The notes beneath the pieces were generated by a model. The model was not told the DNA's origin, made no database searches, and saw nothing but the letters and a program-made list of their open reading frames with translations. Both the position numbers and the translations under genes were made by a program. Source: Magallana gigas (Eukaryota). From it: a stretch of 64,000 bases of DNA. Below are positions 3,319 through 57,534 of the stretch, one piece after another. Position 1 is the stretch's first letter. Each line of letters opens with the position of its first letter. The DNA lies in contig NC_088853.1 of the NCBI RefSeq assembly GCF_963853765.1, positions 53,258,001 through 53,322,000 on the forward strand. The letters run 5' to 3'.

Positions 3319-4387
3319 ATGTCTTCGTTTATTCCTGTTAGTGTCAGTTACCCACTCCTGTTCATCCGCCAAGTCCTGGAACTCTGGGACTACCAGTGAA
3401 ATGCGCCCCAGCAGACGTACGAGAGAGTGAGTTTTCGTGCTCTCCATATGACGGAGTCTGAGGAGAATCCTGTGGACAGTTTTGAGGTTGGGGAGTTTTT
3501 TACCACCAAGGCCGATTTTAGTCGGGAAGCTGCAACCCAACGTTCAGAGAAGATTGGTTCCTCCTCCTAGACCGCCGCCGCCTAACTTCAACAGACGAGG
3601 AGCCAGCCCAGAGTCACCGGCCAGCCCTGATGGTTCGGAGCCTTATTCTCTGACGGACAGCCCCACTAAACAAACTGCACCATCGCCTCCTCCGTACTCG
3701 CCCAATAGGTTACAGTGTGACAGATCCCTGTATGTGACAATGCAAGACTATCAATTTGCCTTGCCTATGGACTGCCCTGACGATCGACCACCCAGAACAC
3801 CAGAACCATTTTCAGTGGCGAATCCCCCTCTGCAGCCCGCTCCAGAGCTCCATGCCAGGATTCGGAGGAGAGCTCCACCCCCTCCCAGATCCGTAGGACG
3901 AGGAGCTGATCGGAGGGAACCGTACGCCAGACCTCCCATTCCCTCTGAGAAGTCGGCGTTTGTCCGTCCGCGACCCTTACCTTTTGGACGAGCCAGAAAT
4001 CTGTTCGCAGATTTCATCCCGATTATCGAGTCGCCTCCCTCTCCACCGCCCATGGTAAGGACGTTTCCTGGGCCTCCTAAAACCCCTTCAACGCCACTTC
4101 GTCCTCCTTCCTGATCGCCATCCCCAGAATCAGATATTTTCCTGGAGCTGTACCAGCACAGCCGGCACCCCGTAGATGCCAGGAGCCATTTAACGATCAT
4201 CCCGAGTTGGAGCAGAAAAGCTGAGAAAGAAGAGAGAGGGGAATGTGTAATATGCTATGGGGAAAAAGAACACCTGCAAGTCCAGTGTCAGAACTGTGGG
4301 ACGATGACAGTTTGTTGTGTCTGTGTTGTAGGGGTCTACCAGAGTATCAATTCCTGCCCGATGTGTCCATTCCGGGGGGAGTTTTAG
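3319..4387 (+). pseudogene. Pro-rich protein with C-terminal RING-like C4C4 zinc finger (Maverick accessory gene, disrupted)
   Basis: ATG 3319, in-frame TGA, and a frameshift into ORF 3482-4114; reading through TGA 4112 gives CVIC-x10-CQNC-x5-CCVC-x10-CPMC ending at TAG 4385-4387. Confidence 0.65.
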
Positions 4388-4447
4388 GGAGAGCCCAGCA
4401 GTCCAAGGCAGCTAAAGGCTAAGTCCATCTAGCCGAGAAAAACCAAC

Positions 4448-4486
4448 GGCCCTTTTCAGGGCCTCCCATATTTTACGAAAAGATGC
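4448..4486 (+). terminator. Histone-type mRNA 3' stem-loop plus histone downstream element
   Basis: AACCAAC-GGCCCT TTTC AGGGCC (4448-4463), TCCCA, then GAAAAGATGC (4477-4486); 60 nt after the RING stop codon. Confidence 0.85.
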
Positions 4487-4551
4487 TATTTATTATAATG
4501 CAAATAGAAATCAAATATGAAACACCAGTCACACTTCCCTCATACACCAAC

Positions 4552-5181
4552 ATGTATTCTTAAGAGTTACTCTCTCCCTTTCAATTAAAACACGAATTTA
4601 CTATGGTCGTAGCGGGTCCTTCTAAATCGGGGAAAAGAGAATTTGTAAAAAAGGTAATATTAAATAAGCATTGGATCTCCCCTCCCCCGGAGAGAATTGT
4701 TTGGTGTTATCGAGAATGGCAACCGGCCTACGAAAGTTTACGGGGTGAAGTTTAGTATATTCGCGATATACCAGAAAACGAGGAGGAATTAGTAAGTGAT
4801 GTCAGCATTCGTCACCATTTAATTTTTGATGATATGATGGGAGGGAAAGCCATCGTCGATTGGTTTACTCGCAAAGCTCATCACTGTAACACCAGTCTGA
4901 TTTACATTACTCAAAATGTGTTTGATCGAGCCGTCCAACACCGGACGATTAGTTTGAATACTCATTACATGGTTTTGTTTAAAAATCCCAGAGACAAATC
5001 TCAAATCACCGTTTTGAGTCGACAAATAAATATGCCTAATTTAATGTCTGTCTATTTAGATGCTACTCGCATCCCTCACGGATATATGTTAGTGGATTTA
5101 AGTCCACAGACTCCCGACGAATTGAGATTGAGAAGTCAAATGTTTGAGAATTTAGTGGTGTATATGCCACGAAAAATATAA
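4552..5181 (+). pseudogene. Maverick packaging ATPase (FtsK/HerA, A32-like), disrupted
   Basis: MYS*ELLSPFQLKHEFTMVVAGPSKSGK (Walker A), LIFDD (Walker B), HH.N.S.IYITQN; in-frame stops. Confidence 0.9.
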
Positions 5182-5224
5182 ATAAAGGTGATGTACGATT
5201 TACATCATTTTGACTTGGAACACC

Positions 5225-5749
5225 ATGGCAAGACAAAAGAAAATTTTGAGACTCCTGAAACTTTTGCAGGGAGAAAAAGATCCAGTAAAGAGACAAGAGA
5301 CCATCGAGTTAAGTCGTAAGACTTTATTGAAATGGTTTCTCATTGGTGCAAAGAATTTGCTGAACGGGACTATTCCTATCGATAAGCAAACTCAACGTTT
5401 TATCGATAAACATTGAGAAGATGATGATAATAGATTAAAAGCGATCTTGAAACGAGGAGGAGCTGGATTTTTAGGAGGGGCGATCATTCGTCACTTGTTG
5501 AAATGGAATCTGAGTAAAGAGAGAATTGCTCAACCTAAAAAGCGTAAATCAAAGAAAATAACGCAGAAATTAAATATAAAAGATTTTGTAAAAACCCCTC
5601 CCCTAAGGAAAGACTTACCTGATTGGGTTCAGGAGCAAGTAGATTTATATCGACAAGATCAAACAGGTCAAAATCAAGATCTCATTGATCAGATAGATCA
5701 ATATCAAGAGGTAGCCCCTCCTGAGCCAAAGAAAAAGAAAAGGGGTTAG
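5225..5749 (+). pseudogene. Homolog of Maverick ORF 45511-46398, disrupted
   Basis: LKWFLIGAKNLLNGTIPIDKQTQRFIDKH and ILKRGGAGFLGG.IIRHLLKWNL are nearly identical to the copy B protein. Confidence 0.75.
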
Positions 5750-13065: not shown

Positions 13066-15421
13066 CTACTGAATAGGTTCTTCAATGTCATACTTTTCTG
13101 CAATCTCTTTCAAAAGGGGAGCCTGTAAATTAACAAGGGCCACACAAAGTTGAAATATTTTAGTGGATAGGTGTCTATACTGTGACGGAATATGGCTCAG
13201 AATTTCAAAGTTCTTTATTCTTTCATTTGCCCGCTCCACATGGATTCTGCTTCTGCCTATTTTATAGCACAGTTGAGCTTCTTCCTTAGTGAAATGTGAT
13301 TTGCTAGTGAGGAAAGGCGGGATATTTAGGGTGACACCATTTGGAAGTTTGTCAAAAATGTTGAATCCTTTGTCAGCCAGGATCATATCACCAGCTTGCA
13401 GCTTCTCTAATATGCCACAATGGTCCACTATTGCGGAGTCTGAGGTTGATCCAGGATAAAGATCGGAACAGAACACAAGAGCAGCATTAGGTGCAACACA
13501 AGTTAAAGCCTTTACTGTGTGGTGACTCTTGTAGTTACTGTATGCCAGTGACTGGCTATTCATATCTGTTGGGATGTCTTGTGTCACTTCTGTGGCGTCC
13601 ATTGCAATTCTAGCCGATGAAAATTCTTCAAATGACTTTGGCATGGATCCTTGGCATTTCAGTTGACTTGGTATTCCGACAGCTTTCATGACCCCTTCAA
13701 ACAAAATTTCATGCAGGGCATGCACAAATGTGTTGATAATATTGGACACAGTAGCACGACTAGTGTTGAACCTCTCTGCTAAATCAAGGTCCCTGCAGTT
13801 GAGTCGTAACTTCATTAATGTCATCAACAACTGATCGCTGACACTAAAGTTCACCACAGTCCAACCACCATAATAATTGAACGGGCCCATTCTCTCCACG
13901 AGGTTCTCCAAAATGTAAAAGGTATCTGCAGAAAATGATGTATACAGCAGCATCTGTACAAAAAGAAACCAACAACAACAATCACATTTATGTTATTAAA
14001 ATACTGTTGAATAAAGTTTTCAAATATGCAAGCCAATAAGGAAATCTTTATACATGTACTGCAAAAATCTATAGTTTTCATTGTAACATACCTTTTCAGG
14101 GTCATTAATTATGTTCCCAATTGTCATGGACGGTTTTTTAAGCTTCAGCATGTTAATTTCTTGCTGCAACTTTACTAATTCCTCTTCCATATGTTTAAGG
14201 GATGCTGGAAGAATAACAACTGTTTACAATATATAAAGTCCCTAGTATACATGTTTATAAATATACAAACACATAGAAACACTTTGCTTGGAAGCATAAA
14301 AACACCGATAAAGGAGTATCACATTTTCTGTTTAATGTAAAAGTACTAAACGTATATATACATTGTACATGCATTTGTATCTGGTTGTGTTAACACATTT
14401 TACACCATGTCGGTACCTTTATTATGTTGAGGACTTCAAGTTGCATACTCGTGATCATGAAGTACAGTTATGCTGTCTGGTACAGTAATATTGGAATTGG
14501 CCTCAACTTCAGCCTCAGCTCCCACATCTATGTTTGAAGCAGATATTTCCTCTACAGCAGGTTTCATAATTTTGCGTCTATGAAGAAATAAGAGACTAGC
14601 ATATTACATGATCTGCCTTTTCACTTGATGCTGCTATAGTATTGCATTTTCTTCTTGTGAATTTTCAGTAAAATATTTTTTTAATGCACGCACCAGTATG
14701 TAAAATGAATGTTCAATCAGATCATTATAAACATACAATATTCATGTGCATATTCATTGTAGATGGATAACCTGCATGTACTTAAATCTGACATTATATC
14801 TTCACATTTATCTTTTGCATTACAGTTTACATGTAAACATGTTTTATAAATACATATAATATATGATAACACAATCTGTCTCCTAAATGTAATCATACAT
14901 GTATGTAGTATAACTGGTAATGAAATATTTGTATTTTGTGGAACTGCGGATTTTCTGATACCTTTTTGGTATGGCTACATCTGGAAAACATCCAAAGTTT
15001 TTACTATAACTGAATATAGTTGGTCCATTCTCTTTCTTGCCATCGAGAAAATGGCAGCTGCAAATCCTGTCATTTGGATTATAATCTCTGTCTGCTCTCC
15101 TAAAATTACGTGTTTTAACGATAAGTAAAATGTTTAGGCTCAAGTATTCTTAATTGTGCATTAAACTCAAATGAAATCTTTAATCAATCATTTATTTAAA
15201 CCTTTTAATCAATTTAATAGGGTTTTTTTGTTCGGTAGTTTTGACCTGTTGACGTCTGCAACTCTCTTTGACTTTTCAGATATATATTTTGTTATGATTA
15301 CTTACCTACATCGTTCAACCCATCGTTTCCTTTCCCTGACGTCGGTCGGAAATCGGTATAAATTGCACTGCAACTTTTTACCGGTCTTGTGTGTGCAACC
15401 GATGGCAAAACAATATACCAT
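13066..15421 (-). CDS. THAP-HTH-DDE_Tnp_4 transposase of ISL2EU (spliced)
   Basis: Exon 1 [11 protein letters not shown]...LYRFPTD..ERKRW and exon 2 RICSCHF (THAP); ORF 13066-13953 has [23 protein letters not shown] and [12 protein letters not shown]. Confidence 0.9.
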
Positions 15422-24460: not shown

Positions 24461-25804
24461 CAGTCATTGGACAAAAGTATTCGTCGGTGACGTCAAAATG
24501 GCGGCGATTTGTTTACATTAACTACTCAATAAAAACTACTCTCCTGATTTTAATATTCGTTGTCTTACCTTAATATTTTGTGAGATTGCCCTTCATTTTA
24601 ATAACTTCTAGAAGACGGGTTAGAATTGTGGCATACAGCTGACGAACATATTCTACCGATAGGTTTTGCCAGAATCGCGTCACTTCCGCGATCAGCTGGT
24701 CTTTAGACTCGATGGTGTTTCTTGTAGATTGCAGGCGTCTTTTAAGTTTCAACCAAATATTCTCAATGATATTGATATCGGGAGACCGAGCTGGCCATGA
24801 TGTAGTGTTTATATTATTTTCTTCCATATATGCACTGAGTAATCGGGATCTATGAACGGGGGCATTGTCATCTTGAAACACATAATTTCCATGAGGAAAA
24901 TGTCGAACAATAACGGGCCACAAATTGTTTTCTAATATATCAATATATTTTTCGGAGTTGATATTACCATTTACACTGGTCAATGTTCCAACACCATCGT
25001 AACAAATACAACCCCATATCATAACAGACAGTTTGCTCTTCGATGGCGCGCACACGAGATGGGGGTTGTCAACTTCATCGGTCTTTCGCCAGATATATAC
25101 ACGGTTGTTATCACCTATTACTACCTGACATTCATCACTGAATACCCAGTTCGTCCAGTGATCATCAACAGTCCAGTTTTTTCTTTCTCTGCACCACGAG
25201 ACGCGTTTTTTCCTGTTACATACTCTGACGATCATCTTCTTTTTCTGCACCCGTCTATTATATCCCATTTTAAATAATTTTCTCCTGACAGTCTTTGAAC
25301 AGAAAGTAGAATCCTTTGCATTATTTATTTCACTCGTTATGTCATCCAGTGTCCCTCTCCTGTTACTTTTCATGATTCTTGAAAGTTGGACTTCATCGCG
25401 CACGGAGAACTTCGGCTTCCGCCCAGATCGATGCCTGTTTTCCACACTTCCATGAACTTCAAATTTTTTAATAATACTAACAATAGTAGTCCTAGGTATT
25501 CCCAACAACCTCCCAATTTCTGCCTTCTCCGTCTTGTAAGCTTCTATAACTTTCATTCTTACTGCCACCGGAATTTCCTCTAACTTACGAGGGGGCATTT
25601 TCCCAAGCTTTGTTTATGGATTATTTTGACAGCCGACAAAAATTGTAAACTCTGACGTTATCTAAAAACTATGACGTATTTATGGGAAGAAATTCCGAAC
25701 CCGACGTGCTTTCTATAAATAGCACGATACAAAAATAGCCGCGACGAATTTACAACATCAAAGGCATTTTGACGCCAGCAACGAATACTTTTGTCCAATG
25801 ACTG
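24461..25804 (-). mobile_element. Full-length Tc1-family transposon (1344 bp)
   Basis: TA-flanked; ~40-bp TIR whose first 24 bp CAGTCATTGGACAAAAGTATTCGT are identical at both ends. Confidence 0.95.
24570..25598 (-). CDS. Tc1 transposase, DD34E, uninterrupted 342 aa
   Basis: HTH GIPRTTIVSIIKKF, GRKPK linker, VFSDE, FQDDNAPVH, WPARSPDINIIE; 34 residues between D and E. Confidence 0.95.
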   Translation of the reverse strand: MPPRKLEEIPVAVRMKVIEAYKTEKAEIGRLLGIPRTTIVSIIKKFEVHGSVENRHRSGRKPKFSVRDEVQLSRIMKSNRRGTLDDITSEINNAKDSTFCSKTVRRKLFKMGYNRRVQKKKMIVRVCNRKKRVSWCRERKNWTVDDHWTNWVFSDECQVVIGDNNRVYIWRKTDEVDNPHLVCAPSKSKLSVMIWGCICYDGVGTLTSVNGNINSEKYIDILENNLWPVIVRHFPHGNYVFQDDNAPVHRSRLLSAYMEENNINTTSWPARSPDINIIENIWLKLKRRLQSTRNTIESKDQLIAEVTRFWQNLSVEYVRQLYATILTRLLEVIKMKGNLTKY

Positions 25805-39205: not shown

Positions 39206-39666
39206 AAATTTACTTATCAAGAAATTACCGGTCAGCAATGATGTCAATATATTATTTTGGTACTATCTTTCCTTGTGCAGGTTTGAGTATTGTTCCCATA
39301 TATTTCACCATATTAGACTGTCAGAATGTTAAAAATTACATATAAGTCAAAGTTAATGTAGGATTTGTCAGTTTTCCTAGTCCAAGTAATTTCCAATTTT
39401 TTATTTGTATGGAACGCCATTCTTGTCATCAACAGTATATGTGTGAATTTATAGGACAGCTGTTAAATAAGATGTTGTTCTTTTGTAGCTTTTTACCTGG
39501 TTTATTAAAAAAAATCATGAAACGAATAAACTAGTTGAAAACTTTCTGTCACAGAGACAGAACAGTAAAAAGATTGTAACGACTTGGACAAGGAGATTCA
39601 CATTTTGGCGTCTATGACGTAACGGCGTTCGTCGATAATTGGATCCGATGTCTTATACAAGTTAAA

Positions 39667-39740
39667 AGTAGTATAAGCCGCCTCGCTGGCCGGGTCAACT
39701 GAGTGCACTTTTCAGAGTTGACCCGGCCAGCGATGCGGCT
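39667..39740. repeat. Maverick left terminus with 25-bp-arm hairpin
   Basis: AGTAGT 39667-39672; arms 39676-39700 and 39716-39740 with one mismatch; 15-nt loop. Confidence 0.85.
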
Positions 39741-40009
39741 GAAAATCTAGCTCCCTGAGATTTTAAGCTAATAATGCGGGGTGACCAATCTAAAGTAAGC
39801 ACTTGATCGATGTTTATAGTTGGCGCATCATAGATCCCGATTTATTCAATGATTTTTCCCTCCTTGCATAATGAAATAATAAAAAAGCGAATAAACAGTG
39901 AACATTGGTTTATTGAGAAATGTATGAAAATAAAAACAAGTATGAAATAACACTGAAACAATTCAAATTTACATGAAATAACACTGAAATAGTTCAATTA
40001 CACAAAAAG

Positions 40010-40636
40010 TCAAAATACTGTCACTTTTTCTTTGCGAGAGGTAATTATGGTATTATCTCTTTTCAGATTCGGTTTTCTAGGGCTCGAGGTTTTTTTCTTG
40101 TCACCGGCTGGTGGATTATTTTCTTTTTCAGGGCATTCGGAGGCCCAATGTCCAAGGTTTTGACAAATATAGCAGGGATCTTTGTCTTTGCTTTTTTTAG
40201 GAGGATCCTGCTTTTGTGGACATTCAGGTGCCCAATGCCCTAGTTCTCCGCAGATATAACAGGGATTTGTTTTCCTGGTCGGGATTTTTGATGTGACAGG
40301 TGTCGTATTCCTGGTCTCATTTTTTATTTCACCTACTTGTTCGCTTAGAGCCTGTAGATCATTGGTAATAATTTTCCTGGTTTCACTGATTTCGTTGGCG
40401 AGATTCATCAGATTGTTGATGCTCCCATCTAGGGTGGCCATGAGCAGAGCAAGATCTTCTTTAGTAGCTGGTTTTTCTTGATCCAAGCATGCCAGTTCAA
40501 GATCCGTTGCATCCTGCGATTCCGTGATAGACTGATAATAATTCATAGATTCCCTAAGTGTGGTAGGATGATTATAATTTAAACTGGCAGAGACAGGGTC
40601 TGGACTATCAAAGCGGTCTAGTTGTTTCTGCGCCAT
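40010..40636 (-). CDS. Coiled-coil protein with two CCHC zinc knuckles (Gag nucleocapsid-like)
   Basis: CYICGELGHWAPEC and CYICQNLGHWASEC (C-x2-C-x4-H-x4-C); upstream TATAAA near 40690; AATAAA downstream near 39910. Confidence 0.8.
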   Translation of the reverse strand: MAQKQLDRFDSPDPVSASLNYNHPTTLRESMNYYQSITESQDATDLELACLDQEKPATKEDLALLMATLDGSINNLMNLANEISETRKIITNDLQALSEQVGEIKNETRNTTPVTSKIPTRKTNPCYICGELGHWAPECPQKQDPPKKSKDKDPCYICQNLGHWASECPEKENNPPAGDKKKTSSPRKPNLKRDNTIITSRKEKVTVF

Positions 40637-40685: not shown

Positions 40686-41030
40686 CTTTATAAATCTTAT
40701 GCAGTCTTGTGCACGAGGCTCTAAAAATAGCAATTTTTTCTTAAAATAGCATTTTTGCTATATACTAAATAGATCCGATGCAATAGATATTTTAAAAATA
40801 GCACATTTCTAAAATTGGCTATCATTTTTTTCCATATTTGCTGCACGCGGCTCTAAAAATAGCTAATTTTTTCTTCTAAAATTAACAATTTTTTATCTTA
40901 TTAATAGATCCTATGCAATATCTAATTAAATAATGAAATAGCATATATATTGTTTAAAAAACAATTGTTTAAAATAGCATATATTCATTTCTAAAAATAA
41001 ATCTGTTTTCATTTCCCTTTATGTATAAAA
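40686..41030. promoter_or_regulatory. Divergent promoter region with two TATA boxes and repeated YTA(A/T)4TAR (MEF2-consensus) motifs
   Basis: TATA boxes near 40690 (minus) and 41024 (plus); CTAAAAATAG at 40721 and 40853, TTAAAAATAG 40792, CTAAAATTAA 40876, CTAAAAATAA 40991. Confidence 0.5.
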
Positions 41031-41066: not shown

Positions 41067-44000
41067 ATGACGCTCACATCTATTAAAAAGAGTCTTCTCC
41101 GCGAGCAACGCCGTTTGAGAGAATATCGATTGAAGCAAGAACGTTTAAAACTAAGAAAAGAAAACAACCAAATACTTCAGCATTTACGGCTTTTTAGAAG
41201 AAATCTTCAACGGAAAAAGAAATTGGCCCAAACGAGAGAAAAATCCAAGTACTATCAGATCAGACTGGATCGAGGTCGTCGTTCACGTAAATTTAAGGTC
41301 CAAGAAAATGTATACAATGTGAATTTTAAACCAATACCTCAGAAAGATCATTCTCCCTTCGTTCGGAATGTGATAAGTGAGATGTTAAACGAAGTAAAAG
41401 AACAAATGCGTTGTGACCCCGACGATTATTTGCGATTAAACATACGACACCCCTCCTTAGATTCTGACATTTGGTATGAATTTACTCAATGCAAGCATCT
41501 AAATGCTGAGGGATTACTCGCTAAAATAAAAGGGGTACAACAATCTAAAAGAGATTTCACCATGACGGACGGAGCTGTTCAGTTTGATTTTGTTCATGTC
41601 CAGTATCCTCAAGGAAGTGGTGGAAATAAGAAAAAACACCTATATACAAACAAGGAGAAATTCAAAAAAGGGAAAAAGTCCATTCTGAGTATTCAGAACA
41701 CAGATTCTTTATGTTTACCTCGCGCTATTGTAGTTGCTCGTCTACACAGTAAAAAACCACAGGACCCCGGAGCTTTTAACGCCTGGCAAAAACAATGGAA
41801 GCGGATACAAGAAGCCGATTGTAGAAGTGCAGTTCAAAAGAAACAAGCTCTAGAGCTGATGGAACTTGCCGGGTGTGATTCAACTCTATCTTCTTGTGGA
41901 CCTCTAGAGCAGGGGAATTTACAGGGGGTGTTGTACCCTGAATTCCGCTTGAAGATATTTCAATTCCAAGCAAACAGTTCTACATTAAAATTAGAGCCAA
42001 TATACAAGGGATATGGAAACGGCAAGTGCTTAAACGTGTTGTTAGATCAAGGGCATTATGATACTATACTCTCTATGCCTGGGATTAGTGAACACCAGTA
42101 TTACTGTGATGATTGTGATGTAGGATACAGCCACATTGAAGAACATCGTACCACTTGTCAATATTGCTGCTCTTTTTGTCTGAGCGAGACCCCCTGCCCC
42201 CCGGACGGCAGCTGCATCGAATGTTCCGAATGTCATGGTTTTTTTAAGAGCATGACATGTTACCAGAGTCACTTAAAACCGTACAGTTCTAAGACTAGCA
42301 CCACTGTTTGCAGTATGATGGATCGATGCCAGCACTGTCAGTCCTGGATGGCTAAAAAATTGTTAGCAAATCACAAATGTGGAGGCCAGAAAAAATGCAA
42401 GATCTGTAAGAAAATTGTTGACAAGGACCACCAATGTTACGTTCAGAAGAAACCCTAAAAGAAAAAGAAAAAAGACAAATTACAGCTGTACATTTATTTC
42501 GATTTCGAATGCACACAAGAACATGGTATTCATATCCCGAATTTATGTGTGGCCCATCGTGTCTGTCAACACTGCGATCACTTACCTGTTAACGAACCCT
42601 GTACCAATTGTCAGGCTTTAGGACCCCGTCAACATGTCTTTCGAGGACCAGATACCTTAAAACATTTTGTAGAGTGGCTATTACAACCTGAATGCAAGGT
42701 TAACAACGTATCACAGTTAGTGCACGAAGGGGCTATTGTTATCGCTCACAATTTTAAAGGGTATGACGGGCAATTTATCTTGAATTATATAGTTCACAAA
42801 GCCTGTATCAAACCCTCTGTCATCATGAACGGAAGTAAATATTATCTATGGAAATTTGTGGGGTAAAATTCATAGATTCTTACAACTTTTTGCCTTTTGC
42901 ATTGTCTAAAATGCCTTCTGCTTTCGGCTTCCGGGAACTAAAAAAAGGATATTTTCCTCATTTTTTCAATACCGAACGGAACCAGAATTATGTAGGAGTC
43001 TATCCCTCACCCGCTTTCTACAATCCAGACGACATGAGTACCTCGGGACGCAAAGCTTTCTACGCTTGGTATGAGAAACAGCAGGGAAATGTGTTTAATT
43101 TTCAAGAAGAATTCCTAGCCTATTGTATTTCAGATGTGGATATTTTAAGACCTTGTTGTGCTCAGTTTAGAACAACTATTCAAACCCTTGTCCGTGTGAA
43201 TCCTTTTCAAGAAGCTATAACCTTTGCCAGCACTGCAAATCTCGCTTACCGACGGAGTTTCATGCCTGAACACACCATAGCTATCATTCCTAATCTGGGA
43301 TACCATCCCGCTCGACAGTATTCCATTAAAGCATGTCGTTGGTTGGCCTGGGAGGGTCGGGAAAAGTCTATTCGACATGCCAAAAACGGAGGGGAGGTCA
43401 GACTCGGGAATTTTACAGTAGATGGCTACGATGAGGTCAACAACACTGTGTATGAATTCCACGGTTGTTACTGGCATGGCTGCCCTATATGTTATCCAGA
43501 TAGGGTCACAGACATTCATCCTCATCACTTTGATAGGACTTATGCTACAGTCTACGAGCAGACTCTACGACGGGAAAAAGCATTACGAGATGAAGGTTAC
43601 AATGTTGTCAGTATCTGGGAGCACGAATTTGACCAACAACTGAAAAACCAGGAAGAGTTACAGACATTTTTAGAGCATTTAGACTTTCAAGATCCTTTAA
43701 ATCCCCGAGATAGTTTGTACGGCGGTCGTACCAATGCTACTCGTTTGTTTTGTACAGAGGGAGATATGCGATATGTAGATGTTTGTTCTCTGTATCCTTA
43801 CGTTTTGAAATACAAACCTTTCCCCGTGGGCCACCCCGAAATCCTGACCGAAAATTTCGGAGATGTGAGATCTTACTTCGGACTGATCAAATGTCGCGTC
43901 TTACCCCCACATGGTCTGTATCATCCCGTCTTACCCTATCGCACAGGGGGTAAATTACTGTTTCCTTTATGTCGGACCTGTGCAAAACAACGATTGGCTC

Positions 44001-44807
44001 TAGACCCCGAGTACAGATGTCAACAATCGGATTCAGATCGGTGTCTGACGGGAACATGGGTAACCACAGAACTACAGAAAGCGGTTGAAATTTGATCACA
44101 TTTACGAAATCTGGCATTTCCCTCAAAGCAGTGAGACCTTGTTCAAAGCTTATATCGACACCTTTCTTAAAATCAATCAAGAAGCTTCAGGATTTCCACC
44201 CGACTGTGAAAGTAAAGAACAGAAACAAGCATACATACATGATATTTACCAAAGGGAAGGTATCATGTTAGATTTGCTAGAAGTCGAGAAAAACCCAGTC
44301 AAACGCACTATAGCTAAACTGTTTTTAAACTGTCTGTGGGGGAAATTCGCTCAAAGAATCCAGCTACCGAAATCTCGATACCTGACAGAGGAAGCAGAAT
44401 TTCAACAATTATTACAAGATACCAGCTTAGAGGTCAAAGGGGTAGAACTCTTACAAAATTTGGAGGATCCTAACTCTGACATGATATTGATCAATTATGA
44501 GGAGAAAAAAGAATTCGTGGAAGAATGTCCCTTTGGTAACGTGGTGTTAGCCTGTTTCACCACGGCTCATGCACGATTACATTTGTATGAGACATTGGAA
44601 AAACTGGGAGAACGTGTGTTATATTTCGATACAGACAGTATCATTTATCAACATGAACAGGGGGAGTTTAATCCTACAACTGTCAACAGTTTAGGAGGAT
44701 GGACTGATGAATTAGACGGGGGTCACATTATCAAGTTTATGTCAGGGGGCCCAAAGAATTATGCTTTTGAAATAGACTGTGGAAACATTGTTTCAACTGA
44801 AACATGA
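41067..44807 (+). pseudogene. polB: Protein-primed family B DNA polymerase (pPolB) with Cys-rich N-terminal region and endonuclease-like insert; disrupted and 3'-truncated
   Basis: YFDFEC, AHNFKGYD, FIDS.NF, VDGYD...YEFHGCYWHGC, YGGRT, YVDVCSLYP, KLFLNCLWGKF, YFDTDS, GGPKNY; stop at 42456, frameshifts ~42845 and ~44090. Confidence 0.95.
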
Positions 44808-45472
44808 ATTTACCATGGTGGTAGCAGGCCCTTCTAAGTCGGGAAAAACTGAATTTGTTAAAAAGCTAGTAGAAAATACTCATTGGATCTCCCCATCCCC
44901 CGAAAAAATCATCTGGTGTTATCGAGAATGGCAACCAGCCTACGAATCTCTTACAACATCGCGTAAAGTTTATACGCAATATTCCCGAAGATGATGAGAA
45001 ATTGGTAGCAGATATCGAGACTCGACACCTCTTAATTTTTGATGATATGATGGGAGGCAGGGCTATCGAATCTATTGTGGATTGGTTTACAAGAAAAGCC
45101 CATCATCGGAATACTAGTGTTATTTACATTACTCAAAATGTATTTGATCGAGCAGCTCAACATCGCACTATTAGTTTAAACGCTCATTATTTAGTCTTGT
45201 TTAAAAATCCTAGAGACAAGTCTCAAATTGTCGTGTTGAGTCGACAATTAGATATGCCACATTTAATCTCGGCCTATCATGATGCCACTCGAATACCCCA
45301 CGGGTACCTGATTGTGGATTTAAGCATGCCACATTTAATCTCGGCCTATCATGATGCCACTCGAATACCCCACGGGTACCTGATTGTGGATTTAAGCCCT
45401 CAGACCCCCGATGAATTACGCCTGAGAAGTCACATGTTTCAGACCCTTACAGTGTATATGCCTAGAGTATAA
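44790..45472 (+). pseudogene. Packaging ATPase (FtsK/HerA, A32-like), 5'-truncated and frameshifted
   Basis: GPSKSGKT, LLIFDD, HHRNTSVIYITQN; frameshift ~44960; 72-bp in-frame duplication at 45254-45397. Confidence 0.92.
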
Positions 45473-45510
45473 ATATTAGAGTTTACATATACCCAGAATC
45501 ATTTGAAATC

Positions 45511-46398
45511 ATGACTGGAAAGAAGTTACTACACACATTACGGCGCTTACAACATGAACGAGATCCTGAGAAACGCGCGGAAATTATTGAGCTGGGGCGA
45601 AAAGCCTTAATGAAATGGTTTTTAACCGGGGCTAAAAATTTATTGAAAGGAGTCATTCCTATCAATAAACAGACACAGCGTTTCATTGATAAACATCGTG
45701 AGGATTTAAGGGTCATTGCCAATAAAAAGGTCAATGATGATAATAGAATAAGAGCTATTCTGAAACGAGGTGGGGCTGGATTTATTGGAGGAGTCATCAT
45801 TCGTCATTTATTGAAATGGAATTTGGCCAAAGCCCGAACAGCTAAACCAAGAAAAAAAACCCAAGGACGACGACTCAAGAGTGTGATAGGAAAAGTACTC
45901 AATTCCAAGGCTCCTAAACTGAGACAGTTACCCCAGTGGATGGTAGACATAGGGAAGGTTTCCTCACGCAAAAGGAAAGCTCCTAGAAAAAAGAGATCTC
46001 CCAGGAAAACCTCTCGGAAAGGACAAAAACTGATTGTAAAACTTCCTCCAAGACAGAAAAAGCCTCCTGAACAAGTTCCTTTGACCCAGCCTTCCCCCAA
46101 TACCACATTAGCCATGGCTCAAATGAAAATGAATAGAGCGATGGCAGGGCCAATAGGGAGTCAAAGAACGCCTGATATTCAATCCAGTGTGTTTCCCAGA
46201 ATTAAAGTTCTTGTTCATCACATCCCGAGATATTCCTCATTGTTTAGTAAAGTGACAGGTTTCAGTCCGTTACAAGACCCAGATAAGAAGAACAAGAAAG
46301 GAAAATATGAATGTCGCTACTGTCCCATGGAATTTAAACTGAAAAAATCCAGAGATCAACACGAAAAAACTACTCATCTTGGCTATGCCCCTCCTTAA
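45511..46398 (+). CDS. Maverick protein with conserved NLLKG-type N-terminal domain, basic linker and C-terminal C2H2 zinc finger
   Basis: AKNLLKGVIP; Lys/Arg-rich middle; CRYC-x12-H-x4-H at the C-terminus. Confidence 0.8.
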   Translation: MTGKKLLHTLRRLQHERDPEKRAEIIELGRKALMKWFLTGAKNLLKGVIPINKQTQRFIDKHREDLRVIANKKVNDDNRIRAILKRGGAGFIGGVIIRHLLKWNLAKARTAKPRKKTQGRRLKSVIGKVLNSKAPKLRQLPQWMVDIGKVSSRKRKAPRKKRSPRKTSRKGQKLIVKLPPRQKKPPEQVPLTQPSPNTTLAMAQMKMNRAMAGPIGSQRTPDIQSSVFPRIKVLVHHIPRYSSLFSKVTGFSPLQDPDKKNKKGKYECRYCPMEFKLKKSRDQHEKTTHLGYAPP

Positions 46399-46816: not shown

Positions 46817-47635
46817 ATGAGTCGTAAAATGGTGTTAGTTCCGGAAGCAATGTTACTAGAATTGAAAGGTAAATTGCCTAAATCTCCCGAATTTCAAGCT
46901 ACCATTGGCTTAGGACATCAGTTAGACCATATTCAAGGGAGAGAAGATTTAAACCCAGAAGAAAAAGTAGCCCTCTATGGTCATCAATTACATCGTTATC
47001 GGAATTATTTACAACAAGCCCGTGATCAAGGAAAGGAGAGGACATTTACAACACCATTACCTAGCGCAGAAAAAGATAAAGAGGCAGTCGAAGATGATGG
47101 GGCTGCTGCTGATGTTGCTGCTGACCCAAGTTCCTCAGAACTAGAAGAACAGGTGATGAAAAGTGTAAGCAAACAGATGCAAAAGAGAGCAGGACTTCTA
47201 TTAGATCACCTCAAAAAAACTAAAGTCTTAAAATGGAACTCCGATGGAGAAATAAGTTATCGAGGAAAACGCATACCCCAGTCTAATATCGTTGATCTGG
47301 TAACTAATACAATGAGAACTAAATCCCGTAGAGCATTTCGCTCTCCGATCGGCATTGACGAATTTGCTCAAGCCTTGAAAGAAACCAATGTGCCGACGGA
47401 TTACCTACAGAATCCAAACATTATAAAAGCCATGCAAAAGCCTGGAAAAATCAGTACCCCTAAACCCCTTCAAGATGAAAAAGACGATAATGACGACGAT
47501 ACTGGGTTTCAGGAAGCTTTTACGTTTACTACACCACAAGCTTCTCCCTTCTTTATGACGCCAAAAGTATCAAAGACAGTAAAAAAGAGAGGAAACGCAC
47601 AAATCTTAAATTGGGATAAATTGGGCAAGAAATGA
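46817..47635 (+). CDS. Conserved Maverick hypothetical protein
   Basis: MSRKMVLVP start; LKWNSDGEISYRGKRIPQSNIVDLV block typical of Maverick core ORFs; uninterrupted 272 aa. Confidence 0.75.
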   Translation: MSRKMVLVPEAMLLELKGKLPKSPEFQATIGLGHQLDHIQGREDLNPEEKVALYGHQLHRYRNYLQQARDQGKERTFTTPLPSAEKDKEAVEDDGAAADVAADPSSSELEEQVMKSVSKQMQKRAGLLLDHLKKTKVLKWNSDGEISYRGKRIPQSNIVDLVTNTMRTKSRRAFRSPIGIDEFAQALKETNVPTDYLQNPNIIKAMQKPGKISTPKPLQDEKDDNDDDTGFQEAFTFTTPQASPFFMTPKVSKTVKKRGNAQILNWDKLGKK

Positions 47636-48735
47636 AGAAAAAGAAAAAAAAATTAGAAGACATATTACGAGAGATTTATTATGATCCTAAGACTGGATAT
47701 GGAGGCGTACAAGCCCTATACCGTCAAGTACGTGCTAAGGGGTATCCTATATCACTTACGGATATTAGAAAATGGTTAAAAGAACAAGAAACATATACTC
47801 TGCATAAACCCATTCGTCGGAAATTTAAGCGACAACAAACTCGAGTGACCGGTATCGATGAGCAATGGCAATTAGACTTAGCAGATGTATCACAGTTAAA
47901 GAAAGAGAACGAGGGTAATACCTTTTTACTGTGTGCTATCGATGTACTCTCAAAATATGCTTGGGTGGTGCCATTAAAGCAAAAAACTGGGAAGGAAATG
48001 ATACGAGGATTACAACAGATCAGTAAACAAGACGGGCGACAACCCGTTCGCATTCAGTCGGACAAGGGGAGGGAATTCACAAACAAGGAGTTTTTACGCG
48101 CTTTTAAATCCATTCATTTCTTTACCACTCGCAATGCAGAAACAAAAGCAAGTATCGTGGAGCGCTTTCAACGCACACTTAAAGCTCGCATGTGGAGATA
48201 TTTCACCCGTCATAAAACTCGCCGATATCTTGACATCTTACCGGATCTTGTGTTCGCCTACAATCACTCGTATCATCGCAGTATAAAAAGAGCTCCAGCT
48301 GATGTGAATGCCTCTAATGTATTACAAGTGTGGAAAAATCTGTATAAAAAAAATTCATCTACAACTTTCTATACTCCTAAATTTCACAAAGGTGACAGAG
48401 TGCGCATCAGTAAAGCTAAACGCACTTTTGAAAAGGGATATCTGCCTAACTGGACCAGAGAGTTATTTACGATTTCTCGTCGAGTCCAGGAAGCTGTTCC
48501 ATACAGATATAAAATACAAGACTCTCATGGAGAAGAATTAGAAGGAACATTTTACGAATCAGAAATGCAAAAAGTCATAAAAAAAGACGATGTATATGAA
48601 GTGGAGGAAATATTAGACTATAAAAAGCGGCGAGTAGGAAAAAAAATCATAACTGAAATCAAAGTGCGTTGGAAAGGATATCCTCCTAGCTTTGACTCAT
48701 GGATTCCTCAAACAGATCTCCTACTTCCCAAATGA
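47632..48735 (+). CDS. int: Retroviral-like (rve) integrase with C-terminal chromodomain, intact
   Basis: WQLDLAD, IDVLSKYAW, QSDKGREF, VERFQRTLK, GYLPNWT; YEVEEIL...VRWKGYPPSFDSWIP. Confidence 0.96.
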   Translation: MKKKKKKLEDILREIYYDPKTGYGGVQALYRQVRAKGYPISLTDIRKWLKEQETYTLHKPIRRKFKRQQTRVTGIDEQWQLDLADVSQLKKENEGNTFLLCAIDVLSKYAWVVPLKQKTGKEMIRGLQQISKQDGRQPVRIQSDKGREFTNKEFLRAFKSIHFFTTRNAETKASIVERFQRTLKARMWRYFTRHKTRRYLDILPDLVFAYNHSYHRSIKRAPADVNASNVLQVWKNLYKKNSSTTFYTPKFHKGDRVRISKAKRTFEKGYLPNWTRELFTISRRVQEAVPYRYKIQDSHGEELEGTFYESEMQKVIKKDDVYEVEEILDYKKRRVGKKIITEIKVRWKGYPPSFDSWIPQTDLLLPK

Positions 48736-53576: not shown

Positions 53577-54089
53577 ATGGATACAGGGCAGTTACGAGCC
53601 GTGTTATCACAATCCTTAGGCAGTTCTTTTGCGGGCGTCTATCCCAGAGATTTAATTCCCCATCAAAAAAGACCGTACGAGAAAGCGATCGTCGTGAATA
53701 CAGATCCTCACGATCGACCAGGAATGCATTGGGTGTGCCTTTATTTGAATACTCCCATCATTGAATACTTTGATTCATACGGATTACCCCCCTTACACCA
53801 TGAAATTAGAGATTTTATAGCTCGACATGCTCAACAATGGGACTACAATCGGAATCGTTATCAGGATTACTCTACGGACGTCTGTGGACAATATTGTGTG
53901 TATTATTTACAACAACGCCATCGAGGGAACATGAATGCTTTAGACTGGCTTTTTCCATTCCCAAAGACGTCGAGGTTATCCCCCCTTCAACGGGATCATT
54001 ATGTAGCTGAGTGGTTTAGAGAGACTTACCGTAAAGCTAAAAGAAATCAAGGACAAACTTGTCAATGTTTCTGGCAAAATATGTTTTAA
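53577..54089 (+). CDS. Adenain-like cysteine maturation protease, intact
   Basis: VNTD....GMHWV, YFDSYG, YQD....VCGQYC give the H-D-Q-C catalytic set. Confidence 0.95.
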   Translation: MDTGQLRAVLSQSLGSSFAGVYPRDLIPHQKRPYEKAIVVNTDPHDRPGMHWVCLYLNTPIIEYFDSYGLPPLHHEIRDFIARHAQQWDYNRNRYQDYSTDVCGQYCVYYLQQRHRGNMNALDWLFPFPKTSRLSPLQRDHYVAEWFRETYRKAKRNQGQTCQCFWQNMF

Positions 54090-55850: not shown

Positions 55851-56162
55851 AGAAACATCAAGAGTCTCAGGGTTCGCTGAAAAAAAAAATAAGATAAAGT
55901 TGAAATAATTCTCTCTAAAAAAAAAAACAAAACATTAAACAATTGAAGAAATGTTGGTATCTTCCTATGACATATGTACAGACTATTTGTCATATCTTAA
56001 CAAGTAATCTATAAATATATCATACAAAATAACACCAAGAGTCTCAGGGTTCGCTGAAAAAAAAAAGTAAGATCAATGAAACAATGATTAAACAATGAAA
56101 TCGAATGAAAAACAAAAAACATTTAGACAAAACAAACAATTCGTTTCTCTGCTATAATAGAG

Positions 56163-56223
56163 GCATCTTTTCTAAAAATCTGGTGGCCCTTAAAAGGGCC
56201 GTGGGGGTTGGCTTTAAAAAGCC
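56163..56223 (-). terminator. Histone-type 3' end: imperfect stem-loop, canonical stem-loop and downstream element
   Basis: Minus strand reads GGCTT TTTA AAGCC (56210-56223), GGCCCT TTTA AGGGCC (56185-56200), ACCAG, then GAAAAGATGC (56163-56172). Confidence 0.9.
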
Positions 56224-56231
56224 CTACTGAT

Positions 56232-56624
56232 CTACTGATGTAGAATCCTCGGCAGCTGGCTAGTCGACATTCTAGCCGTTTGCCGCTGGCGGCTAGGTCG
56301 TGGCACGGGGAGGATGGCTGGCGATGGGGGTGGTGTCATATCCCTGAGAGGAACGGGGATAATTGCCGGCGGCCTGTAAGGGTGCTCCCTTCTCCTCCTC
56401 CTCCTCCTGAGGGGACTGGCCTGGGCAGGCGGTGACTGGGGGGCTGGAGGGTCTGCCGCTGCTTGGGGCTGCTGCTCTGCCGATGGCGGGGGCTGCTGCT
56501 GCTGGTGTGCCGCCCGCATTCCTCGGACGTCTAGTTGGGAGATCCGCCCGATCTCGATCTCCGCTATGGTCCGGTAGTGCACCTCCCCGTTACAGTCATT
56601 CCTTATGTGTTTAAACAAATCCAT
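56232..56624 (-). CDS. 130-aa Pro/Arg-rich protein with C-terminal histone H3 tail mimic carrying Met at the K9 position
   Basis: Intact ORF; SRQRQTARMSTSQLPR (56247-56294) aligns to H3 ARTKQTARKSTGGKAPR. Confidence 0.85.
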   Translation of the reverse strand: MDLFKHIRNDCNGEVHYRTIAEIEIGRISQLDVRGMRAAHQQQQPPPSAEQQPQAAADPPAPQSPPAQASPLRRRRRRREHPYRPPAIIPVPLRDMTPPPSPAILPVPRPSRQRQTARMSTSQLPRILHQ

Positions 56625-56717
56625 TGTGAATTAAAACATCCTTTAATCTGCAGTTACATCTTGACTCTACCCTTGTTTATTACCAGTAGATCCTACCCTG
56701 ATGAGTGGCCTACCCTG

Positions 56718-56863
56718 ATTGGACAAATCAAAATACAGAATGTTCTAGAACGCATACTAATTAGTTTAAGGTGGTAAAATATAGCTGGCTTTTCTAGAAA
56801 GTTCTAGAAATCGATGACAGTAATGTACGGATTCTTATGAAGTCATAGTTTTTTATGACGTCA
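56718..56863 (-). promoter_or_regulatory. Stress-type promoter: CCAAT box, two perfect heat-shock elements and a CRE/ATF site
   Basis: ATTGG 56718-56722; GAA-TG-TTC-TA-GAA 56738-56750; TTC-TA-GAA-AG-TTC-TA-GAA 56792-56809; TGACGTCA 56856-56863. Confidence 0.75.
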
Positions 56864-57090
56864 CTTTGAACTCCCTGATGTTTAATAACTCAGTTTTTTA
56901 ACTACACACTAAAATACATGATATTATACCTGACTTTAATAAAAAAAAAAATCGGGAAAAGCAGAACATTTTGTTAATAGCAAATACATTTTTAATTTGA
57001 ATTAGAATTTGCACACTATAAACAACATAATATTTTGTTATGTTTAATAATTTTAATCGATGAATACAGTGAAATACACACATACGAAAT

Positions 57091-57339
57091 TCAAGTTCTC
57101 TGTTGTTTGATATAGGTCCATAACAATTTTCTCAATTTACACATAGTTCTTACACGGTCTACGGCCACGAACATCCACGGACTCCTCCGGTCTTCGGGAG
57201 GTAAAACATATATTTGATCCTGTGCAGTATCAAAAGTCACTCGTTTTCCTTTAGATTTTTGAGACTTAATAACTTCATCCAACCGAATTGAATGGTTGTA
57301 ATACGAATCGCTTCTATCTGTTGATGAAGTCGATGACAT
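57091..57339 (-). CDS. ICP34.5/DP71L/GADD34-like PP1-recruiting protein
   Basis: KRVTF (RVxF) followed by EDRRSPWMFVAVDRVR, matching the R.GPW...A.DR.RF motif of this family; first ATG at 57339. Confidence 0.75.
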   Translation of the reverse strand: MSSTSSTDRSDSYYNHSIRLDEVIKSQKSKGKRVTFDTAQDQIYVLPPEDRRSPWMFVAVDRVRTMCKLRKLLWTYIKQQRT

Positions 57340-57534
57340 TTTATCCACTTTTTACTTCTGTCGGGGGATAAGATAAACTCCAGGATATCTTGATGATATT
57401 CTGTAGAAGAAACGCCAGTCAGTTTAGGTAAAACTGCTTTTTAACTGCATCGGCGATGTAAGCAATTATCTAAGCAAAGTGAGCAATTAACTTGGGTTTT
57501 TTTTTTTTTTGCAAAGTAACTACTCTATTAACAA

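What the first reader, a model, noticed from the sequence alone, without database searches (positions are those of the whole stretch)
56718..56863. Two perfect heat-shock elements plus CRE upstream of the H3-mimic gene
Seen: a 3-unit HSE (56738-56750) and a 4-unit HSE (56792-56809), both mismatch-free, plus TGACGTCA, a near-CRE ATGAAGTCAT (56838-56847) and CCAAT, all within ~240 nt of the ATG. I noticed no comparable HSE elsewhere in the element. Known: such arrays bind HSF trimers, and the plant retrotransposon ONSEN is heat-activated through HSEs. Inference: heat or proteotoxic induction, ecologically relevant for an intertidal host.
Basis: partly seen in the sequence, partly recalled or inferred. 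Interest (0 to 1): 0.8.

Follow-up and report, generated by a model that had tools for sequence, protein, structure and literature searches.

The report
Heat-shock promoter block in a Maverick
Two perfect heat-shock-factor binding arrays, with a CCAAT box and a cAMP-response element, are really there and are kept in diverged copies; they sit in front of a small accessory gene at the end of a virus-like Maverick/Polinton element of a probable oyster, so this part of the element is probably wired to the host's stress response, although this copy is damaged.

Summary
A 3-unit HSE (56738-56750), a 4-unit HSE (56792-56809), TGACGTCA (56856-56863), a near-CRE (56837-46, one base off) and CCAAT (56718-22) lie 93-239 nt upstream of the minus-strand ATG at 56624. 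These are the only perfect HSEs in 64 kb. A 4-unit plus a separate 3-unit array this close arose in 3 of 4000 simulations.

The block is kept in three diverged lineages of the locus. HSE core bases changed in 2 of 42 comparisons, spacer bases in 6 of 20.

The gene is the second gene of an accessory module at the right end of a degraded Maverick/Polinton. Its neighbour is a PPP1R15/GADD34-type PP1-binding mini-ORF, and a histone-type 3' stem-loop follows its stop.

In this copy one deletion of about 270 nt removed the canonical start codon, about 25 codons and a conserved TATA-like box. Two other arrangements lack the HSE block yet keep the gene.

Heat induction is plausible but untested here. 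No expression or HSF-binding data were available. HSE-bearing mobile elements are known (ONSEN, Caenorhabditis Helitrons); I found none reported for Mavericks.

The parts
56856..56863 (.). Palindromic CRE/ATF site TGACGTCA
   Evidence: Perfect in L001, L033, L034 and L002-L006; one mismatch in L009.
56837..56846 (.). Near-CRE / AP-1-like ATGAAGTCAT (ATGACTTCAT on the minus strand)
   Evidence: Identical in all five loci that cover it, and duplicated in L009.
56792..56809 (.). Distal heat-shock element, four perfect inverted nGAAn units (two TTCTAGAA palindromes 10 nt apart)
   Evidence: Four perfect units in L001, L033 and L034, with one spacer change in L033/L034. Three perfect units plus one mismatched unit in L009.
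56738..56750 (.). Proximal heat-shock element, three perfect inverted nGAAn units
   Evidence: Perfect in L001, L012, L008, L033 and L034 with spacer changes; one core mismatch in L009.
56718..56722 (-). CCAAT box, inside an invariant 17-nt stretch
   Evidence: Invariant in all 7 aligned sequences.
56676..56681 (-). AATAAA, a possible TATA-like box 51 nt before the ATG; not kept in lineage b
   Evidence: Absent from L033, L034 and L008.
56625..56870 (-). Conserved upstream regulatory block of the accessory gene
   Evidence: 88.7% identical to L033/L034 and L008, and 81.7% to L009. The coding part is 72-81% identical.
56232..56624 (-). This copy carries one deletion of about 270 nt relative to close relatives, so its start codon is not the canonical one.
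   Evidence: There are 24 relatives, all unannotated Logan contigs. N-terminal difference shown. No Pfam family and no histone hit in the PDB.
56159..56205 (-). Histone-type 3' UTR stem-loop (Rfam RF00032), 26 nt after the stop codon
   Evidence: 34.8 bits against a gathering score of 34. The same hit occurs in 8 of 11 related loci, 7 of them at or above 34 bits and up to 40.8 bits.
57091..57339 (-). Upstream neighbour: 82-aa ORF with an R-V-T-F motif, PP1-binding region of PPP1R15/GADD34 type
   Evidence: Pfam PF10488 is the top hit at E=0.012, below its cut-off. The only PDB hits are PPP1R15B, at E=0.067. Four of its more distant relatives pass the PF10488 cut-off.
56159..57461 (-). Accessory two-gene module, as far as it is colinear with relatives
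   Evidence: L033/L034 align to 57461-56589 at 88.7%. L001 aligns to 57590-56058 at 98.9%.
42848..44807 (+). [quoted passage not shown] The Pfam matches lie in two adjacent ORFs in different frames, so there is at least one frameshift.
   Evidence: PF03175 at 3.8e-35 and 1.3e-09.
47632..48735 (+). Retroviral-type integrase with a C-terminal chromodomain
   Evidence: rve 8.5e-10, Chromo 1.2e-08.
40709..40933 (+). CTAAAAATAG-type repeats at the left end of the Maverick. An inverted counterpart lies at the far end of the module in relatives, so they look like terminal inverted repeats.

Best explanation
The stretch 56718-56863 is part of a retained stress-type upstream regulatory block: CRE, a CRE/AP-1-like site, a 4-unit HSE, a 3-unit HSE and a CCAAT box. 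It belongs to the second gene of an accessory module at the right end of a Maverick/Polinton element in a probable oyster genome.

Inferred mechanism: on heat or proteotoxic stress, host HSF trimers occupy both arrays. Together with CCAAT- and CRE-binding factors they drive minus-strand transcription from a start shortly downstream of the CCAAT box. In intact relatives the transcript runs through a conserved 10-codon upstream ORF and a leader into a small Pro/Arg-rich ORF. The 3' end is set by a histone-type stem-loop rather than by polyadenylation.

Shown: the motifs, their rarity, their retention, the gene order, the stem-loop and the PP1-binding neighbour. Inferred: HSF binding, the start site and heat induction.

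In this copy one deletion of about 270 nt took away the rest of the leader, a conserved TATA-like box, the canonical start and about 25 codons. The HSEs therefore now lie 113-185 nt from a substitute in-frame ATG. The host Maverick is itself degraded: the polymerase is frameshifted and the right end is missing. The block is therefore probably a competent HSF target, but the output of this copy is uncertain.
For: Motifs and statistics:
- The motifs are exact and unique in 64 kb.
- The joint occurrence arose in 3 of 4000 simulations.
- All seven pentamers read AGAAn.

Retention:
- Both HSEs, the CRE and CCAAT are perfect in L033/L034, which are 88.7% identical over 893 nt.
- The proximal HSE and CCAAT are perfect in L008, whose protein is only 39% identical.
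- In L033 and L009 compared with the window, HSE core bases changed in 2 of 42 cases and spacer bases in 6 of 20 (Fisher p=0.011).
- In lineage b the block is better conserved than the coding sequence: 88.7% against 72%.

Transcription clues:
- A 10-codon upstream ORF just downstream is kept in 6 of 6 loci that carry it. This suggests the region is transcribed as a leader.
- ATTAAA signals lie just after the upstream ORF's stop, consistent with separate transcription units.

Host factor: oyster HSF1 activates nGAAn/nTTCn-bearing HSP promoters (PMC7652795, PMC6688261).
Against: - No expression or HSF-occupancy data could be consulted.
- HSE cores are not better conserved than the rest of the block (2 of 42 against 50 of 494 changed, p=0.41). 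Retention may reflect constraint on the whole block, or recent ancestry.
- Only three lineages carry information, the contigs are short, and the species are unknown.
- Two arrangements lack the block: L002-L006 with an intact ORF and L013 with the same ORF as L012.
- The AATAAA TATA-like box is not kept in lineage b. A TATA-like box that is conserved in all lineages lies in the segment this copy has lost. The start site is therefore unknown and the window copy may lack a core promoter.
- The 4-unit array could have arisen by a 10-nt duplication of one palindrome, so chance is less remote than the simulation suggests.
Confidence: 0.6

Rival explanations
1. The HSE-like palindromes have no HSF function. 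One TTCTAGAA palindrome was duplicated, a third arose by chance, and all were inherited passively in a young repeat family.
For: TTCTAGAA-type 8-mers are not rare: TTCnnGAA occurs 20 times in the window. The 4-unit array is a 10-nt direct repeat. HSE cores are not more conserved than the flanking block (p=0.41). Some copies do without the block.
Against: All three TTCTAGAA copies outside a Tc1-like transposase ORF lie within 67 nt here. The joint occurrence arose in 3 of 4000 simulations. Substitutions hit spacers and avoid cores (p=0.011). The motifs lie with CCAAT and CRE in the order usual for stress promoters, next to a conserved leader.
Confidence: 0.15
2. The block serves the upstream PP1-binding (PPP1R15-like) gene, or both genes, as a downstream or shared stress enhancer. 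Alternatively it lies inside an intron of a longer transcript that joins the two ORF regions.
For: HSEs act in either orientation (established knowledge). The block lies 282-359 nt after that ORF's stop. The UniRef gene model A0A8W8NV61 of Magallana gigas joins the PP1-binding exon to the GC-rich ORF region in another frame, so the block would be intronic in that model. In L002-L006 the CRE stays attached to the PP1-binding gene while the HSEs are gone.
Against: The automatic gene model cuts off the conserved second half of the PP1-binding region and reads the second ORF out of frame, so it is probably spurious. CCAAT, the conserved upstream ORF and the downstream ORF all point away from the PP1-binding gene.
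Confidence: 0.15
3. The TTCTAGAA palindromes are bound by another dimeric factor, of the host or the element, or serve replication or recombination near the element's end.
For: The module lies near the element's terminus, next to terminal-repeat-like sequences in relatives. Rearrangement junctions cluster around the module.
Against: The 2-nt spacing and 5-nt phasing over 3 and 4 units is the HSF signature (nGAAn repeats, PMC7652795). No such palindromes occur at the left end. The spacing between the two arrays varies between lineages, about 57 against 70 nt, as expected for independent trimer sites.
Confidence: 0.05

Closest known systems
HSP70-type heat-shock promoters of animals, including oyster HSP70 genes activated by HSF1 (PMC7652795, PMC6688261)
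   Same: Arrays of three or more inverted nGAAn units within a few hundred bases upstream of a gene. They are combined with a CCAAT box and an ATF/CRE-type site.
   Different: The gene is not a chaperone. It is an unannotated Pro/Arg-rich ORF of a virus-like element, and its mRNA would end in a histone-type stem-loop. The start site is unknown. In this copy the canonical start and a conserved TATA-like box are deleted.
   Same: A mobile element that carries HSF binding sites of its own.
   Different: In ONSEN the HSEs lie in the LTR promoter that drives the whole element. Here they precede one accessory gene at the end of a DNA element. The polymerase, integrase and capsid genes have none. Heat activation is not shown here.
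Caenorhabditis Helitrons carrying HSEs (PMC6927752)
   Same: A DNA transposon family that spreads HSF-1 binding sites through an animal genome.
   Different: There the HSEs rewire nearby host genes. Here they are tied to a gene of the element, and no effect on host neighbours was examined.
Short viral PP1-recruiting proteins of the GADD34/PPP1R15 family, Pfam PF10488 (for the neighbouring ORF)
   Same: An R-V-x-F motif followed by the conserved Trp/Ala-Asp-Arg stretch, in a very short protein. Relatives pass the Pfam cut-off.
   Different: The window ORF itself is below the cut-off. It is carried by a Maverick, and no function has been tested.
EZHIP and lysine-to-methionine histone H3 mutants (PMC12713659, PMC9768651), for the regulated gene
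   Same: A disordered protein with a short, well-conserved tail-like motif that has Met where a methylatable Lys would be expected.
   Different: A profile search against solved structures returns no histone. The target enzyme is unknown.

Membership tests
HSF-responsive (heat-shock) promoter | At least three contiguous inverted nGAAn units | tested here: met
   A 3-unit and a 4-unit array with no mismatch.
HSF-responsive (heat-shock) promoter | Position within a few hundred bases upstream of a transcription start | tested here: inconclusive
   The arrays lie 113-185 nt from the ORF's ATG. No start-site data exist, and the family's conserved TATA-like box is missing from this copy.
HSF-responsive (heat-shock) promoter | Retention of the HSE cores in homologs | tested here: met
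   Cores are perfect in L001, L033, L034, L008 and L012, with one mismatch per array in L009. Cores changed in 2 of 42 cases against 6 of 20 for spacers. Cores are not better kept than the flanks, and the block is absent from L002-L006 and L013.
HSF-responsive (heat-shock) promoter | HSF occupancy and a heat-induced transcript | not testable with these tools
   No expression or binding data were accessible.
Maverick/Polinton element | [quoted passage not shown] | tested here: met
   PF03175 at 3.8e-35 and 1.3e-09, in two ORFs in different frames.
Maverick/Polinton element | Retroviral-type (rve) integrase | tested here: met
   rve 8.5e-10 plus Chromo 1.2e-08.
Maverick/Polinton element | Capsid, packaging ATPase and adenoviral-type protease genes | tested here: inconclusive
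   Only a weak Peptidase_C5 hit, E=0.03, for ORF 53577-54089. The other ORFs have no Pfam hit.
Maverick/Polinton element | Terminal inverted repeats | tested here: not met
   No inverted repeat was found in 36000-64000. Relatives have an inverted copy of the left-end repeats beyond the module, so the right end of this copy is probably lost.
Replication-dependent histone mRNA 3' end | Stem-loop matching Rfam RF00032 at or above the gathering score, shortly after the stop codon | tested here: met
   34.8 bits against 34, 26 nt after the stop. The same hit occurs in 8 of 11 related loci, 7 at or above 34 bits and up to 40.8 bits.
Replication-dependent histone mRNA 3' end | Cleavage after the stem-loop and no poly(A) tail | not testable with these tools
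   This needs 3'-end data.
PPP1R15/GADD34-type PP1-binding region (PF10488), for the neighbouring ORF | Score at or above the Pfam gathering cut-off | tested here: not met
   15.7 bits against 26.1 for the window ORF and 18.7 for P0012. Its relatives P0031, P0033, P0034 and P0035 score 27.4-36.2.
PPP1R15/GADD34-type PP1-binding region (PF10488), for the neighbouring ORF | R-V-x-F motif followed by the conserved Trp and Ala/Val-Asp-Arg stretch | tested here: met
   Read in the ORF translation and aligned to PPP1R15B chains 4v0x, 4v0u and 4v0w.
Heat-activated transposon of the ONSEN kind | HSEs in the promoter that drives the element's own replication or integration genes | tested here: not met
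   No HSE lies anywhere else in the window, including upstream of the polymerase, integrase and capsid-region ORFs.
Histone H3 homolog or mimic, for the regulated ORF | Detectable sequence relationship to histone H3 | tested here: not met
   Searches against the PDB with the ORF, its last 32 residues and the family profile return no histone. There is no Pfam family. The motif-level likeness was not testable without typing a comparator.

The most novel reading that the evidence does not exclude
The right end of this Maverick lineage carries a stress-gated module. Heat or proteotoxic stress acts through HSF and the two HSEs, with an upstream ORF that favours translation when eIF2-alpha is phosphorylated. 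This switches on a small disordered protein whose conserved C-terminal motif imitates a histone H3 tail with Met in place of the methylatable Lys, and that protein blocks the H3K9 methyltransferases that silence the element. The neighbouring PP1-recruiting mini-protein keeps translation going by reversing eIF2-alpha phosphorylation. The histone-type 3' end ties the mRNA to the histone supply machinery. That would be a virus-like element that reads host stress to lift its own heterochromatic silencing.
Probability: 0.1. Interest if true: 0.9.

Novelty: new variant of a known kind. Interest (0 to 1): 0.6.

Why it matters
Almost nothing is known about how animal Mavericks/Polintons regulate their genes. 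Their accessory genes are mostly unannotated: all 24 relatives of this ORF are unnamed contigs. A retained HSF-type promoter block, in front of a gene with a histone-type 3' end and beside a PP1-recruiting gene, gives a concrete hypothesis. It says that part of the element is wired to the host stress response, and this can be checked directly in public oyster heat-stress RNA-seq and chromatin data. It also matters for annotation. Such blocks spread HSF sites through a genome already known for an expanded heat-shock response, and automatic gene models mis-join these ORFs.

Tried and rejected
- **Terminal inverted repeats in the window.** None was found, so the right border is set only by loss of colinearity with relatives.
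- **The missing segment of about 270 nt as an intron.** Rejected. The segment has no GT-AG ends, shows short direct-repeat microhomology at its ends, and carries the family's start codon.
- **The L002-L006 junction, from the stem-loop to the CCHC-ORF region, as a splice.** Rejected. There are no splice signals and the junction lies inside the stem-loop.
- **More copies in public collections.** A 17-mer from the invariant CCAAT stretch gave 18 metagenome hits, all by chance, with no BLAST similarity. It gave none in IMG/VR. A protein-profile scan of IMG/VR found nothing. The polymerase found only remote IMG/VR relatives.
- **Naming the host from run accessions in the literature.** No paper was found.
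- **Literature on HSEs in Mavericks/Polintons.** Nothing relevant was found.
- **Histone likeness of the ORF by search.** No histone was returned.
- **Bacterial promoter and terminator scan.** Not used, because it is not applicable to a eukaryotic locus.
- **Capture of the block from a host HSP promoter.** Not testable, because no mollusc genome collection was at hand.

Full report
**1. Observation**

The + strand reads GAATGTTCTAGAA at 56738-56750 and TTCTAGAAAGTTCTAGAA at 56792-56809. These are three and four inverted nGAAn units without mismatch, and all seven pentamers are of the AGAAn form. TGACGTCA lies at 56856-56863, ATGAAGTCAT at 56837-56846 (one base lower than stated) and ATTGG at 56718-56722.

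The motifs lie 93-239 nt upstream of it.

Pattern searches find no other perfect 3-unit HSE in the 64 kb window. Three overlapping or adjacent matches all lie here, against 1.2 expected. No other 4-unit array exists even with one mismatch allowed.

In 4000 first-order Markov simulations of the window:
- A 4-unit array occurred in 2.9% of runs.
- A 4-unit array with a separate 3-unit array within 120 nt occurred in 3 runs.

TGACGTCA alone is over-represented throughout the window, 6 against 0.52 expected. It adds little by itself.

**2. What the surroundings are**

Region 41-54 kb carries + strand ORFs of a Maverick/Polinton:
- A protein-primed family B polymerase (PF03175, 3.8e-35 and 1.3e-09). 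The matches fall in two adjacent ORFs in different frames, so there is at least one frameshift.
- An rve integrase with a chromodomain.
- A weak adenoviral-protease match.

The HSE-bearing gene lies to the right of these, on the opposite strand. It is the second gene of a two-gene module.

The first gene of the module is ORF 57091-57339.
- It has an R-V-T-F motif, and its only PDB hits are PPP1R15B PP1-binding fragments (E=0.067).
- Its top Pfam hit is PF10488, below the cut-off.
- A search of 1.84 billion representatives found ten relatives. Four of the distant ones pass the PF10488 cut-off at 27-36 bits.

I therefore read it as a short GADD34/PPP1R15-type PP1 recruiter.

Twenty-six bases after the stop of the HSE-bearing ORF lies a histone-type 3' stem-loop. 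It scores 34.8 bits against a gathering score of 34 for Rfam RF00032. The same hit occurs in 8 of 11 related loci, 7 of them at or above 34 bits and up to 40.8 bits.

The ORF itself has no Pfam family. Searches against solved structures with the ORF, its C-terminal 32 residues and the family profile return no histone. Its C-terminal motif is well kept in the family.

One relative of the PP1-binding ORF is a UniRef entry of Magallana gigas. That is my only evidence for the host.

**3. Relatives**

The 130-aa ORF has 24 relatives, all from unannotated short Logan contigs. I fetched 16 contigs. They fall into five arrangements.

| Arrangement | Loci | Identity to window | State of the block |
|---|---|---|---|
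| a | window, L001, L012 | 98-99% | Present; L012's contig starts inside it |
| b | L033, L034, L008 | 88.7% in the block; protein only 39% for L008 | Present; L008's contig starts inside it |
| c | L009 | 81.7% | Present, with one mismatch per motif |
| d | L002-L006 (five samples) | 90% upstream of the block; about 76% in the ORF | The whole HSE/CCAAT segment is absent, the CRE remains and the ORF is intact |
| e | L013 | 98% in the ORF | Similarity starts just before the upstream ORF; the block is replaced by unrelated sequence |

These arrangements rest.

- **Distal HSE.** It is perfect in 4 of the 5 sequences that cover it, and has one core mismatch in L009.
- **Proximal HSE.** It is perfect in 6 of the 7 sequences that cover it, and has one core mismatch in L009.
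- **CCAAT.** It is invariant in all 7.
- **CRE.** It is perfect except in L009.

I compared L033 and L009 with the window:
- HSE core bases changed in 2 of 42 cases.
- Spacer bases changed in 6 of 20 cases. Fisher p=0.011 for cores against spacers.
- The rest of the block changed in 50 of 494 cases. For cores against the rest, p=0.41.

Spacers therefore drift and cores do not. But the whole block is conserved, not the HSEs alone. The distance between the two arrays differs between lineages, about 57 against 70 nt.

**4. The copy in the window is altered**

Relatives in all other lineages begin with a conserved N-terminus that the window ORF lacks. The window, L001 and P0001 lack a segment of about 270 nt that L012 has. 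L012 is 98-99% identical to the window on both sides of that segment.

The missing segment holds part of the leader, a TATA-like box conserved in every lineage, the canonical start codon and about 25 codons. It has no intron ends.

In the window that reading frame runs on into the main ORF. Protein clusters of copies with the segment have more members (17, 10 and 5) than the cluster of the variant without it (1).

Breaks counted in this copy:
- Accessory ORF: one deletion.
- Polymerase: at least one frameshift.
- Right end: colinearity with relatives stops at 57461. A 127-codon ORF and the inverted terminal-type repeats seen in L002, L033 and L034 are missing.

A second, more degraded Maverick fragment lies at 3482-5541.

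**5. Mechanism**

The order CRE, CRE-like site, HSE, HSE, CCAAT, then a conserved leader with a short upstream ORF is that of a stress promoter reading towards the small ORF.

Oyster HSF1 activates promoters with nGAAn/nTTCn repeats (PMC7652795, PMC6688261). HSF binding and heat induction are therefore the most likely function, at a confidence of 0.6. Both remain inferences.

The start site is open. The AATAAA 51 nt before the ATG is not kept in lineage b. The conserved TATA-like box of the family is missing from this copy.

The rivals are:
- Passive inheritance of chance palindromes.
- Action on the PP1-binding gene, or an intronic position, as in the probably spurious gene model A0A8W8NV61.
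- Another binding factor.

**6. Comparison and novelty**

HSE-bearing mobile elements are known: ONSEN, and the Caenorhabditis Helitrons (PMC6927752).

Here the HSEs do not precede the element's replication or integration genes. The ONSEN-type membership test is therefore not met, although the block may work like a heat-shock promoter.

My searches found no report of HSEs in Mavericks/Polintons. The combination of a heat-shock-type promoter, a histone-type 3' end and a PP1-recruiter neighbour is unusual. I rate it a new variant of a known kind.

**7. Limits and slips**

The contigs are short, and the species and library types are unknown. The lineages may not be independent, and there are no expression data.

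- My first notebook entry gives the approximate place of the deletion in the accessory ORF.
- Several BLAST and alignment outputs show where that deletion lies.

Noticed in passing
window 56159-56205 (-): A histone-type 3' UTR stem-loop (Rfam RF00032, 34.8 bits) lies 26 nt after the stop of the small ORF. The same hit occurs in 8 of 11 related loci. This is unexpected for a gene of a virus-like element.
   Followed up: yes
window 57091-57339 (-): An 82-aa ORF with an R-V-T-F motif. Its best PDB and Pfam hits are PPP1R15B and PF10488, both below threshold. Four distant relatives pass the Pfam cut-off. It is a GADD34/PPP1R15-type PP1 recruiter carried by a Maverick.
   Followed up: yes
L008, L009, L012, L013, L033, L034 (just upstream of the canonical start); window 56595-56624: A conserved 10-codon upstream ORF with a good start context lies ahead of the family's start codon. 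In the window it is continuous with the main ORF.
   Followed up: partly
window 56232-56330 (-) and alignment A6: The C-terminal motif T-A-[R/G]-M-S-T-S-x-L-P-R-I-L is kept in most intact family members, while the rest of the protein is low-complexity and fast-evolving. Many family members are frameshifted copies.
   Followed up: partly
window 45254-45397: A perfect 72-nt tandem duplication (2.0 copies, 100% identical, 24 codons) lies inside the Maverick region. That region is homologous to the packaging-ATPase-like ORF of the second fragment.
   Followed up: no
window 40709-40933; L002 735-1234; L033 86-373; L034 1-258: CTAAAAATAG-type repeats lie between the CCHC ORF and the first Maverick ORF. 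In relatives an inverted copy lies beyond the accessory module, as terminal inverted repeats would. No counterpart exists to the right in the window.
   Followed up: partly
window 3482-5541: A second, degraded Maverick fragment. It has a Pro-rich ORF distantly like the accessory ORF (3482-4114), a stem-loop-like stretch (4443-4497, 82% identical to L001's) and an ATPase-like part (4579-5541, 66-77% identical to 44791-45854). The gene order differs from the main copy. A Tc1-like ORF lies next to it (2489-3049).
   Followed up: partly
L002-L006, junction after the accessory ORF; window 39693-40186: In five samples the accessory ORF is joined, inside its stem-loop, directly to sequence 87.5% identical to the 3' part of the CCHC zinc-knuckle ORF (window 40010-40636, minus strand). 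That arrangement lacks the whole 16-kb Maverick core. It may be a deletion derivative or an orthologous site; this is unresolved.
   Followed up: partly
window 17790, 24488, 26015, 36112, 51596, 56856: TGACGTCA occurs 6 times against 0.52 expected. Two sites flank the Tc1-like transposase ORF 24570-25598 on either side.
   Followed up: no
P0014 (UniRef A0A8W8NV61, Magallana gigas): An automatic gene model joins the first half of the PP1-binding ORF to the GC-rich accessory ORF region read in another frame. It is probably a mis-annotation of a copy of this module.
   Followed up: partly
window 39660-39735: A GC-rich hairpin of about 24 bp (an inverted repeat with a 15-nt loop) lies where similarity to L002 ends.
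   Followed up: no
window 13066-13953 (-), 24570-25598 (-): Intact-looking PIF/Harbinger-type (DDE_Tnp_4) and Tc1/mariner-type (DDE_3 plus HTH) transposase ORFs lie elsewhere in the window.
   Followed up: no
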